Shown piece after piece: positions 19,257 to 22,155 of a stretch of 64,000 nucleotides of DNA; position 1 is the first letter of the stretch; the number at the start of each line of letters is the position of its first letter. The position numbers and the translations under genes were made by a program. The stretch is from assembly GCA_001179505.1 (NCBI GenBank), contig CDMY01000488.1, positions 62,001 through 126,000 of the forward strand, written 5' to 3'. The stretch is from Vitrella brassicaformis CCMP3155. Lineage: Eukaryota > Protista > Chromerida. The notes below the pieces were generated by a model. The model had not been told where the DNA came from. It did no database searches and was given only the letters and a program-made list of their open reading frames with translations.

Positions 19257-19877
19257 TTACGCCGATCCCTTGCCCTTTCCCTTGCCTTTGCCCTTCCCCG
19301 CACCTGGCGGCTTGGTCTCCAGAACCTAGAGGGAGGGGCACACACGCACACAAAAGTCGGTGCATCGATCTGACAGGGCTATGTGTGGCCGCGTGTGTGT
19401 GGATGTGACTGACCGACCTCGTCAAGGGCGAAGTTGTTAGTATTGACGCCAGCGTAGTTGATGGCAGTGAAGCGGACAGTGACGGGATACCGCACCTCGG
19501 GGTTCTTGTCAACCACCACAACATTGCCCTCCTTACCGTACCTGACAAACAAGATCACACACATCAGTCACACACAACACAATCACGACAGATGCACCAA
19601 CCACACTCAGTCGTGATTCCCTCTCGCATCCCTCCGCCCTCTATGCCTTTCTGCTGACATACCAGTAGCTCTCTGGTCGTGTGATCCTCACAGTGGACCC
19701 CTTGGCGACCATCTGTGGCGCGGTCTTCGGTGCAGGTCTCGCCGCAGCAGCATTGGACGCACCCACACCCAGCCTGGTCGGTGGCACGAAAGCAGAGCCA
19801 CTGGCGCGGCGCAGCGACACGCAAGACGACAGCACCACCAGGGACGCCAAGACGGCGACAGACACCAGGAGCTTCAT
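19257..19877 (-). CDS. psaE: Photosystem I subunit IV, nuclear-encoded, with bipartite plastid-targeting leader
   Basis: Three exons: [44 protein letters not shown]|[40 protein letters not shown]|[22 protein letters not shown]. The PsaE motifs R-x-ESYWY, RYPVxVRF and NTNNF are intact. Confidence 0.93.
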
Positions 19878-20304
19878 CGTGTTGCTTGCCTCACGGAAAA
19901 TCGGGGGGGTAGAGCCGCTCAAGTGGGCCTTTTGCTTGTCCCTACGACTGCCTTCCAATGCCTTCAGAGATCTGCAGGGGGGGAACGCGAATCGCTTCAG
20001 GAGGTCGTAAATTGACGCGGATCGATGGCCTAAAAGGGCGAATTCGCGGCTTTGGTCGGCTGGATCTCTCGCGGCACAGGTTTGTGCACGCGCTGGCGCA
20101 CCGTCTGCAATGATAGAGCGGGCTTGATTATCCCCTCTGAAACCCTGAAACCCCATAAACCCTGCAGAATGCATGTGTGTTTGCCGTTGCTGGTGTCTGC
20201 CTCTGTGTTTGGATCCATAGGTGACCATGCAGACAGCCATTGTCGGCCCCAGCCGAATCCTTTGCCTCTCACGCCTGTACATCTGTTATTCTGCAGGTCG
20301 CAAG

Positions 20305-21482
20305 ATGGGTCAGGTGCTTGAGGTGATGGCCAGGTCCAGGCCGGTCAACTCGTCCAGCAAGAGCCTTCACGAGCTCAGTGCCAAGACACTCGACGGGTGA
20401 GTGAGTACAAGAGGGGGCAACTGTTTTACAGCGCCGCTACTACAGCAGGCGAGGAACTGACTGATTCATGTCGTGTGTCTGTGTGTCTGTGTGTGGGGAT
20501 GTAATGTCTACGGCACGCAGGGCCACGGTCAACTTCAAGGACTATGCGGGCAAGGTCCTGCTCGTCACCAACGTGGCATCCAAATGAGGCCTCACCAAGG
20601 TGAGGTGACAACAACACCATACACACAAGAGGCGAAAGACCCGGTATTCTTCACCCACCGCCTGTCTGGCTGCCTGTCTGCCTGTCTGCCTGTGTCTGTT
20701 GATGGCTTCCTTCAGGCCCACTACACCCAATTCACGGAGATCTGGCAGCAGTACCAGGACCGCTTCAAGGGAGGGGAGGGGAAGGAGGAGGGCGGCTTCG
20801 AGATATTCGCTTTTCCGTGCGCTCAGTTTGCCAACCAGGTAGGTACAGACACACACATGCGACGTCCACTGCCACCAGGCTGCACGTGGTGTGGTGCTGT
20901 TCGGCTGGCATGGCAGGAGTTCCCAGACGCGGCCGACATCAAGAAATTCGTCGCGGCTTACAACATTCCTGAGAAGTACAATGTCAGAATGATGGAGAAA
21001 ATCGACGGTGCGTCACTCGTCAGGCCATTGGTCGATCTCGCTGCATGGGTGGGTGGCTGTTGCCTTGTCGGTTTGTGTGGGTGCAGTGAACGGTCCGAAT
21101 ATGCATCCGGTGTTTTCGTTTCTCAAGTACCACTCCAGCCTCTATGACGACCAGTCCAAGACGGCCAAGGACATCTCGTGGAACTTCGGTAGTCACACAG
21201 AGACGACAGCGGTTGACACACACGAGACAGACAGACGCTGTTGCTTCTGCTGGTCGTCAATCACTCACCAGGGAAGTTTTTGGTGGACCAGGAGGGCCAT
21301 GTCGTCAAGTACTACGGGCCGCAAGTCATGCCTAAGTAAGTGAAGCGACCACCGTTGATGTGATGTCACGAACCTATCTCTCTTTCACGCTGCCATTCCC
21401 AACTGTCAGGTCGTTCATTCCGGACATCGACCAGGTCATCGCTCGTGCGCTGCGCGGGTTCGTCCGCCCACCCCCACAGTGA
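20305..21482 (+). CDS. GPX: Selenocysteine-containing glutathione peroxidase
   Basis: Spliced: ..SLHELSAKTLDG|ATVNFKDYAGKVLLVTNVASK-U-GLTK|AHYTQF..FEIFAFPCAQFANQ|EFP..KID|VNG..HPVFSFLK..DISWNFG|KFLVDQEGHVVKYY... All three GPx signature motifs are present. An in-frame upstream ATG at 20227 could add 26 aa. Confidence 0.95.
20585..20587 (+). other. In-frame UGA at the GPx catalytic position (Sec codon)
   Basis: AAC GTG GCA TCC AAA TGA GGC CTC ACC AAG|gt = NVASK-U-GLTK, mid-exon, at the residue that is Cys or Sec in GPx enzymes. Confidence 0.93.
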
Positions 21483-21573
21483 GTGAACAATCGAAAGAGG
21501 TAGCCCGGTTGCCCTGACGCCCGCCGTCTCCCTCTCCGCCCTCCTGCCCCCATCTTCGCTTGCCTTGCCGCGG

Positions 21574-21624
21574 ATGATGGCTGCACCGTCAAACCCCCCA
21601 TAACGGGGCTCGGTGCGGCCTGAG
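21574..21624 (+). promoter_or_regulatory. SECIS element (form II) in the GPx 3' UTR
   Basis: ATGA-T core (21574-78); 10-bp helix ggctgcaccg (21579-88) pairing with cggtgcggcc (21611-20, one G-U); unpaired AAA (21591-93); cccc/gggg mini-stem; closing TGAG (21621-24). Starts about 90 nt after the stop codon. Confidence 0.9.
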
Positions 21625-22155
21625 AGCTTCCCTGGCCTGCCGGTCGGCTGTGTGGCTCCCTATGGGTGTAGGGGGGGCTGCGCCGCCGGCCGGTGGAAAG
21701 GGGAGGAGAGCGAGGCAACGTGACTTGGGGGAGGGAGGGAGGGGGAGAGGGAGATGGGGATGACGGGCGGTCCGAGGTTTTTTCGGTGCGGGCTCGTTTC
21801 GTGCGGTATGTATTTTGGTATTGTGTGTGTGTGTGTCTGTTGCGCAAGTTTGTATTTGTCGGTCGGTCGATCGTGAGGCTAGGACTGATGGATGGATGGA
21901 TGGTCGATGGCTGCAATGCAGCTACATGTAATTGTATTCTGTTTGGATGACTGTGAGCGACTCGAGATCGATTCAACGCGATTGCTGCTGGTGTCCATCA
22001 TTCGCCTTTAATCATTCGCCCATCCCTCTTAGAAAAGAGGCGTCAGCCACGACAGCGCAGAAGCAGCCAGCCAGACAGGCAGGTCGGCAGGCAGGCAGGC
22101 AGGCAGCTATGGGACATCCATCTACCTATCTACATCTAATCAGCCAGTGAGTCAG

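What the first reader, a model, noticed from the sequence alone, without database searches (positions are those of the whole stretch)
20305..21624. Hidden selenoprotein: GPx with in-frame UGA at the active site and a SECIS hairpin
Seen: TGA at 20585-87 sits mid-exon in NVASK-x-GLTK, downstream exons continue in frame with PCAQF and SWNF, and a form-II SECIS (AUGA..10-bp helix..AAA+mini-stem..UGAG) lies about 90 nt past the stop. Established: eukaryotic Sec insertion needs this UGA plus a 3'-UTR SECIS. Inference: this organism decodes Sec, and the enzyme is probably GSH-dependent because no resolving Cys is visible in DIKKFVAAYN. Stop-codon-based gene callers would truncate or mis-splice it; the ORF track breaks here.
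Basis: partly seen in the sequence, partly recalled or inferred. Interest (0 to 1): 0.85.

Follow-up and report, generated by a model that had tools for sequence, protein, structure and literature searches.

The report
Mis-annotated selenium peroxidase in Vitrella
The alga Vitrella brassicaformis, a free-living relative of malaria parasites, expresses a glutathione peroxidase gene whose internal "stop" codon almost certainly encodes selenocysteine; the public annotation cuts this active site out, but such enzymes are among the commonest selenoproteins in algae.

Summary
Confirmed. The window is V. brassicaformis contig CDMY01000488.1. Spliced transcripts keep TGA 20585-87 in exon 2, and it aligns with the catalytic Cys of homologues. 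A type II SECIS lies 92 nt after the stop, in the 3' UTR; it is the only SECIS-pattern hit in 64 kb, but scores below Rfam's gathering cut-off. The public model CEM17300.1 uses a false donor at 20573 and deletes nine residues, including the active site; transcriptome ORF callers split the protein in two. The enzyme is GPx4-like, with no resolving Cys, as in 39 of 46 Sec homologues; glutathione use is likely but untested. Sec machinery could not be tested. The scan already has two Sec-GPx notes on other DNA of this genome, one probably the paralogue. A new member of a known kind; a link to the malaria parasite's Cys enzyme TPxGl is plausible but unproven.

The parts
20169..20220 (+). Upstream coding exon part: in-frame ATG 20169; with the first 8 nt of the next exon it encodes a 20-aa leader with a hydrophobic core
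   Evidence: Spliced transcripts L130/L131; public model starts here; hydropathy maximum 2.4 over 9 aa. Use of this ATG in vivo not shown.
20221..20296 (+). Intron 0 (76 nt, GT..AG)
   Evidence: Joint in X8, X9, X12; L130/L131
20297..20396 (+).
20521..20599 (+). Exon 2, containing the active-site loop
   Evidence: 100% match to spliced transcript L131 over 20520-20600; Pfam GSHPx E 9e-4 on the part before the TGA
20585..20587 (+). In-frame TGA = selenocysteine (residue 53 from ATG 20305, 73 from ATG 20169)
   Evidence: Kept in RNA; aligns with the peroxidatic Cys of homologues; same TGA in the paralogue
20573..20574 (+). False GT donor used by the public model CEM17300.1, which removes 27 nt (9 residues, including Sec)
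   Evidence: Public protein lacks the nine residues; no such joint among those listed in RNA
20716..20838 (+). Exon 3: FPC motif Cys and catalytic Gln (codon 20836-20838); short Gly/Glu/Lys insertion before the FPC strand
20917..21007 (+). Exon 4: helix alpha-2 region, with no resolving Cys
21087..21188 (+). Exon 5: ends with catalytic Trp and Asn (WNF, 21179-21187)
21272..21335 (+). Exon 6
   Evidence: MMETSP ORF P0015 is identical to the window's C-terminal 85 aa
21410..21482 (+). Exon 7, coding part; terminal stop TGA 21480-21482
21574..21624 (+). Type II SECIS element in the 3' UTR
   Evidence: paralogue copy differs at 3 apical-loop bases only
21483..21891 (+). 3' UTR (at least this far)
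   Evidence: RNA contigs identical to the window at 21421-21563 and 21691-21891 flank the SECIS

Best explanation
An expressed nuclear gene of Vitrella brassicaformis for a monomeric, GPx4-like selenocysteine glutathione peroxidase. Shown: the spliced mRNA keeps UGA in the active-site loop and carries a type II SECIS about 560 nt downstream of it in the 3' UTR. Inferred from the established eukaryotic pathway: SBP2 binds the SECIS, eEFSec delivers Sec-tRNA, and UGA is read as Sec. The selenolate, held by the Gln/Trp/Asn of the catalytic tetrad (all present), reduces H2O2 or lipid hydroperoxides. With no resolving Cys, the oxidised selenium is most likely reduced by two glutathione molecules, as in GPx4 (about 65% likely; other thiols are possible). 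Two in-frame starts probably give a long form with a hydrophobic leader (endomembrane or plastid; about 50% that this ATG is used) and a short cytosolic form. A recent DNA-level duplicate elsewhere in the genome encodes a leaderless form.
For: TGA retained in two spliced transcript assemblies. No A>C or A>T change anywhere in three spliced runs, which excludes TGC/TGT in the contigs laid (table 1). TGA occupies the Cys column of relatives. At least 120 metagenome loci hold the same motif with TGA, most in open GPx frames, and 9 bacterial genomes have TGC/TGT there. 101 of 101 Cys-type homologues have a Cys in the helix alpha-2 block, 39 of 46 Sec-type lack it, and so does this protein. SECIS: unique in 64 kb and matches the full SECIS_1 model. 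The paralogue keeps the TGA, all six shared intron positions and the SECIS core; five tested coding differences between the copies are synonymous. Best solved-structure matches are GPx4 and GPx4-derived designs (E about 1e-25) over GPx1 (5e-12). GPX is among the most widespread Sec proteins of algae (PMC7539508). GPx4 is monomeric, lost the resolving Cys and uses GSH (PMC8614756).
Against: No direct evidence of selenium incorporation. tRNA-Sec, SBP2, eEFSec, SecS and PSTK could not be looked up, and I found no paper on a chromerid selenoproteome. The SECIS is below Rfam's gathering score. RNA contigs over the SECIS show the paralogue's loop bases, so the window's exact loop was not seen in RNA, although window-type UTR is seen on both sides of it. 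The paralogue is too close to give covariation. The leader is only moderately hydrophobic and an out-of-frame ATG (20173) overlaps it.
Confidence: 0.95

Rival explanations
1. The public model is right: a donor at 20573 splices out the TGA and gives a 218-aa GPx-fold protein with no catalytic residue (a pseudo-peroxidase).
For: CEM17300.1 and the paralogue CEL96942.1 are both modelled this way; a GT is present at 20573.
Against: RNA joins 20599 to 20716 (L131). No 20572-20716 joint is among the listed joints. The deletion would remove the most conserved loop of the family and leave the SECIS without a purpose.
Confidence: 0.02
2. The TGA is a true premature stop: a transcribed pseudogene, or a 72-aa peptide.
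For: UGA is also used as the terminal stop of this mRNA. Transcriptome ORF callers stop there.
Against: The frame downstream is intact in both paralogues, with in-frame indels only and mostly synonymous changes. The stop lies exactly at the Sec/Cys site shared with many homologues, and a SECIS is present.
Confidence: 0.02
3. UGA is read as Cys or Trp through a changed nuclear code or plain readthrough, not as Sec.
For: Some alveolates (ciliates) reassign UGA (own knowledge).
Against: Both paralogues end at a UGA and their sequences after it are not conserved. A Cys enzyme of this family would be expected to keep a resolving Cys (101 of 101).
Confidence: 0.01
4. It is a selenoenzyme, but it is reduced mainly by thioredoxin or another protein thiol rather than glutathione. 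This rival concerns the reductant only.
For: It lacks the tetramer loop of classical GPx1. The apicomplexan GPx-family enzyme PfTPxGl is a thioredoxin peroxidase (PMC3009606), and the closest Cys-type relatives have a candidate resolving Cys. GPx4 lacks the GSH-binding residues of classical GPx (PMC8614756).
Against: No Cys is available for the intramolecular bond of the thioredoxin-type cycle. The only Cys of the catalytic domain is the one in the FPC motif.
Confidence: 0.3

Closest known systems
Vertebrate GPx4 (phospholipid hydroperoxide glutathione peroxidase)
   Same: Best natural matches among solved structures (E about 1e-25); Sec-Gln-Trp-Asn tetrad; short loop before WNF; no resolving Cys; similar helix alpha-2 sequence; UGA plus 3' UTR SECIS; several in-frame starts (the last from own knowledge).
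   Different: No orthology shown. It has a ~10-aa Gly/Glu/Lys insertion before the FPC strand, a slightly longer loop before WNF (28 aa against a median of 23-24), and a hydrophobic leader unlike a mitochondrial presequence.
Sec-containing GPX of algae and other protists (PMC7539508)
   Same: Same NVA[S/C]K-U-GLT motif and architecture; at least 120 metagenome loci share it.
   Different: Chromerids were not in that survey (0 mentions). This gene falls in a separate group, with WNFGKFL and HPVF.FLKY[HN]S motifs, that holds two apicomplexan sequences.
Plasmodium TPxGl (PF3D7_1212000) and Toxoplasma TPx1
   Same: GPx fold; N-terminal hydrophobic signal anchor followed by internal in-frame Met; cytosolic and plastid forms (PMC6212639, PMC3009606). 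The Vitrella pair of forms has the same outline.
   Different: Those are thioredoxin peroxidases, and Plasmodium has no genuine glutathione peroxidase (PMC3009606); that TPxGl is Cys-type is from my own knowledge. Orthology was not tested because no tool supplied their sequences.
Paralogue CEL96942.1, V. brassicaformis contig CDMY01000249.1
   Same: About 95% DNA identity, same six intron positions, same TGA, same SECIS core, and the same mis-splicing in the public model.
   Different: No leader and a different start; catalytic Gln replaced by Glu; 6-nt and 18-nt in-frame deletions; three loop changes in the SECIS.

Membership tests
Eukaryotic selenoprotein | In-frame UGA retained in the mature mRNA | tested here: met
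   L130, L131; spliced runs X8, X9, X12
Eukaryotic selenoprotein | UGA aligns with Cys/Sec of homologues, with conservation on both sides | tested here: met
Eukaryotic selenoprotein | SECIS with RUGA/GA core, helix II of about 10 bp and apical AA, in the 3' UTR on the sense strand | tested here: met
   21574-21624; flanked by transcribed window-type UTR
Eukaryotic selenoprotein | SECIS reaches the curated Rfam SECIS_1 score | tested here: inconclusive
   25.8 bits against 35; full-length match, best hit in the region. The SECIS-like elements of two Sec-type relatives also miss the cut-off
Eukaryotic selenoprotein | tRNA-Sec, SecS, PSTK, eEFSec and SBP2 in the genome | not testable with these tools
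   Only the 64-kb window is searchable as DNA; no tRNA in it; papers and scan notes gave nothing
Eukaryotic selenoprotein | Selenium incorporated into the protein | not testable with these tools
   Needs 75Se labelling or mass spectrometry
Glutathione peroxidase family (PF00255) | GSHPx domain | tested here: met
   Exon pieces hit PF00255 (E 9e-4 and 3e-4); public model carries PF00255; 263 homologues at E<=1e-10; Atlas model TM 0.76-0.79 to GPx clusters
Glutathione peroxidase family (PF00255) | Catalytic tetrad Sec/Cys, Gln, Trp, Asn | tested here: met
   U53, Q98, W160, N161, numbered from ATG 20305. The paralogue has Glu for Gln
GPx4/PHGPx-like monomeric Sec-GPx | No tetramer (oligomerisation) loop; no resolving Cys | tested here: met
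   28 aa between the VNG motif and WNF, close to the 23-24 median of homologues; aligns to GPx4 with a 3-aa gap there
GPx4/PHGPx-like monomeric Sec-GPx | Reduces phospholipid hydroperoxides with GSH | not testable with these tools
   Needs enzyme assays
Thioredoxin-dependent two-Cys GPx (plant, fungal, bacterial) | Peroxidatic Cys plus resolving Cys in helix alpha-2 | tested here: not met
   TGA at the peroxidatic site and no Cys in the block, against 101 of 101 Cys homologues
Classical tetrameric GPx1-type | Long oligomerisation loop before WNF | tested here: not met
   Short loop; GPx1 is a much weaker match than GPx4
Orthologue of apicomplexan TPxGl/TPx1 | Groups with apicomplexan GPx-family proteins in a tree | tested here: inconclusive
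Orthologue of apicomplexan TPxGl/TPx1 | Hydrophobic N-terminal leader followed by an internal in-frame Met | tested here: met
   ATG 20169, 20305 and 20326 in frame. Function of the leader not tested

The most novel reading that the evidence does not exclude
The gene is the selenocysteine-containing orthologue of the Plasmodium/Toxoplasma thioredoxin peroxidase TPxGl/TPx1, and its leader takes it into the photosynthetic plastid or its membranes. The apicomplexan ancestor would then have had a plastid-associated Sec/glutathione peroxidase that parasites converted to a Cys/thioredoxin enzyme by gaining a resolving Cys. The young Vitrella paralogue pair (leader + Gln against leaderless + Glu) would show a split of compartments in progress.
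Probability: 0.25. Interest if true: 0.55.

Novelty: new member of a known kind. Interest (0 to 1): 0.3.

Why it matters
It corrects two public protein models (CEM17300.1, CEL96942.1) that lack their catalytic residue and would be read as dead enzymes. It adds to the evidence that Vitrella uses selenocysteine; I found no published chromerid selenoproteome. Because Plasmodium has no true glutathione peroxidase, a Sec enzyme of the same group in the closest photosynthetic relative is a usable starting point to study the switch from Sec to Cys and from glutathione to thioredoxin in parasites. The mechanism itself is textbook, and Sec-GPx is among the commonest algal selenoproteins.

Tried and rejected
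Searches with the open genomic frame across exon 3, intron 3 and exon 4 failed. The word-based search was blank because the cluster holding the public model has an 85-aa representative, outside the length window. The HMMER search returned repeat proteins matched mainly through the translated intron, and the PDB search returned picornavirus capsid chains at E>0.08; both were rejected as artefacts. I first took the second sequence form in the RNA for an allele; it is a paralogue on another contig. L130 and L131 are chimeras of the two paralogues, so they were used for the TGA and the splice sites only, not as the window's exact mRNA. A pair count on the SECIS alignment was abandoned (one search failed on length; no paired base varies, so it could show nothing). 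Literature searches for chromerid selenoproteins or Sec machinery gave nothing. Following the operators' note, the joined spliced model was never used as a search or fold query: I translated it in a script only to check frame, and searched with exon pieces by reference and with the public model by its id. No structure was predicted, because the only full-length protein available by reference lacks the active-site loop.

Full report
Source. The window is part of Vitrella brassicaformis CCMP3155 contig CDMY01000488.1: locus L133, fetched through the public protein CEM17300.1, is identical to the window over its whole 11.3 kb. The scan's notes had named the organism; this confirms it independently.

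Observation. The gene has seven coding exons from ATG 20305: 20305-20396, 20521-20599, 20716-20838, 20917-21007, 21087-21188, 21272-21335 and 21410-21482. All introns are GT..AG. The frame is 207 codons, with one internal stop, TGA 20585-87 at codon 53, and one Cys (residue 92, in the FPC motif). A type II SECIS occupies 21574-21624, 92 nt after the stop. It has the AUGA/UGAG core, a 10-bp helix II, AAA and a 4-bp mini-stem. It is the only match to my SECIS pattern on either strand of the window, where shuffles give 0.55 per 64 kb. Rfam SECIS_1 aligns over the full model at 25.8 bits, under the gathering score of 35.

RNA. Three runs with spliced contigs show the joints of introns 1-4 and of a further 76-nt intron at 20221-20296. 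These runs are not on record as RNA; the spliced joints are the evidence. None of them has an A>C or A>T change anywhere in the stretch, so TGC or TGT is excluded in the contigs laid; X8 has no unexplained T>C and X12 no unexplained G>A. Two JGI transcript assemblies (L130, L131) have all seven introns removed and keep the TGA; L131 is 100% identical to the window over exon 2. Contigs identical to the window at 21421-21563 and 21691-21891 place the SECIS inside the 3' UTR. The contigs across the hairpin itself carry the paralogue's three loop bases, so the window's own loop was not seen in RNA.

Annotation failures. CEM17300.1 (218 aa) uses the GT at 20573 as a donor and loses nine residues, including the Sec. 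ORF callers on the transcripts split the protein into 72-aa and 85-aa pieces.

Intron 20221-20296 joins an upstream ATG (20169) in frame. This adds 20 residues with a hydrophobic core (maximum 2.4 over 9 residues, against 3.0 for the neighbouring PsaE leader) and gives 227 aa. Some of the closest relatives have the same plan, a hydrophobic leader followed by a Met-Gly start (P0019, P0028, P0141), while others have no leader. Plasmodium TPxGl has a signal anchor and internal in-frame Met codons, and is found in the apicoplast and cytosol (PMC6212639, PMC3009606). I put use of the upstream ATG at about 50%; a short out-of-frame ORF (ATG 20173) overlaps it.

CEL96942.1 on contig CDMY01000249.1 is a DNA-level duplicate of about 20347-22038, about 95% identical, with the same intron positions, TGA and SECIS. 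The SECIS differs at three bases, all in the apical loop, and has no indel, whereas every intron and the other UTR segments have indels. This agrees with selection on the hairpin but is weak on its own (about 0.09 by chance). The paralogue has no leader, has Glu in place of the catalytic Gln, and is mis-spliced in the same way in the public model. Both junction forms of intron 2 appear at similar contig depth in X8, and transcript ORFs exist for both copies.

Family. The TGA falls in the column of the peroxidatic Cys, and Gln, Trp and Asn of the tetrad are in place. At least 120 metagenome loci have the same motif with TGA, most in open GPx frames; nine bacterial genomes have TGC/TGT there. 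All 101 Cys-type homologues that could be scored have a Cys in the helix alpha-2 block; 39 of 46 Sec-type ones do not, and neither does this protein. The best solved-structure matches are GPx4 and GPx4-derived designs, far ahead of GPx1, and the loop before WNF is short, so a monomer is likely. In trees of the part after the catalytic site, the Vitrella pair groups with Rhytidocystis, the gregarine Protomagalhaensia (Cys), Cys-type proteins of unidentified microbial eukaryotes, and Sec-type metagenome genes from AT-rich contigs. Support is 100/97 with 93 rows and only 72/73 to 86/77 with 27 rows; the inner order is unresolved, and the trees were rooted at the midpoint for drawing only. Most bacterial hits were left out. 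The group holds both Sec and Cys forms, but the direction of change is not shown.

Mechanism. Shown: UGA and SECIS in one transcription unit, an intact GPx frame in two copies, the tetrad, and no resolving Cys. Inferred from the established eukaryotic pathway: SECIS-dependent insertion of Sec (0.95). Inferred from GPx4 (PMC8614756): selenolate attack on the peroxide, then reduction by glutathione (about 0.65); a protein thiol is the rival. Inferred weakly: a leader-bearing form for the endomembrane system or plastid, and a cytosolic form. Not tested: the Sec machinery, because the rest of the genome cannot be searched as DNA here and no paper was found.

Comparison and novelty. GPX is one of the four most widespread Sec proteins in algae, including the alveolate Symbiodinium among the species with selenoproteins; chromerids were not in that survey (PMC7539508). 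I found no paper describing this gene as a selenoprotein, but the library is incomplete. The scan already holds many selenoprotein notes for this genome and two Sec-GPx notes on other pieces; one spans 1128 letters, exactly the span of the paralogue's public model. These notes are unchecked and are not used as support. Verdict: a real and well-supported selenoprotein gene, a new member of a known kind, interest 0.3. The possible link to the Cys-type TPxGl of malaria parasites and a possible plastid location are the only points that could raise it.

Method note. The joined spliced model was not used for any search or fold; that step was left out.

Noticed in passing
window 19877 (ATG, minus strand) and downstream exons to about 19290: A nucleus-encoded PsaE (photosystem I subunit IV) with a signal-peptide-like leader lies head to head with the GPx gene, 292 nt from ATG to ATG; transcript contigs of the two genes abut or overlap near 19980-20000.
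   Followed up: partly
L132:5001-6258 (contig CDMY01000249.1): Recent paralogue CEL96942.1 with the same TGA and SECIS, no leader, catalytic Gln replaced by Glu (only 1 of 46 Sec-type homologues has Glu there), also mis-spliced in the public model.
   Followed up: yes
window 21480-21503: The terminal stop is also UGA, 92 nt before the SECIS (80 nt in the paralogue). Both copies have an in-frame TAG seven codons later, with unconserved residues between; some readthrough of the terminal UGA is possible.
   Followed up: partly
window 20839-20916: Intron 3 is 78 nt, in frame and free of stops; if retained it would add 26 residues right after the catalytic Gln. Only the spliced form was seen in RNA contigs.
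   Followed up: partly
window 20110-20220: Two short out-of-frame upstream ORFs (ATG 20110, 5 codons; ATG 20173, 15 codons, ending at the last base of the exon) could influence which GPx start is used.
   Followed up: no
L134, L135, L136: The closest full-length relatives are Cys-type GPx genes on compact, intron-poor eukaryotic contigs with conserved neighbours (phytochelatin synthase, ODAD1, a WD40 gene); the organisms were not identified.
   Followed up: partly
protein P0017 (Rhytidocystis pertsovi, GHVQ01041538.1): This ORF begins after the catalytic site and lacks a resolving Cys, as expected of a Sec-GPx cut at its UGA: a candidate apicomplexan Sec-GPx.
   Followed up: no
protein P0099: A GPx with Trp at the Sec/Cys position, possibly a TGA translated with the wrong code by the source.
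   Followed up: no
window 19657-20031, 19995-20309, 20700-20896, 21122-21279 (run X11): A 2025 marine sediment metagenome holds near-identical Vitrella DNA, including pieces of both GPx copies.
   Followed up: no
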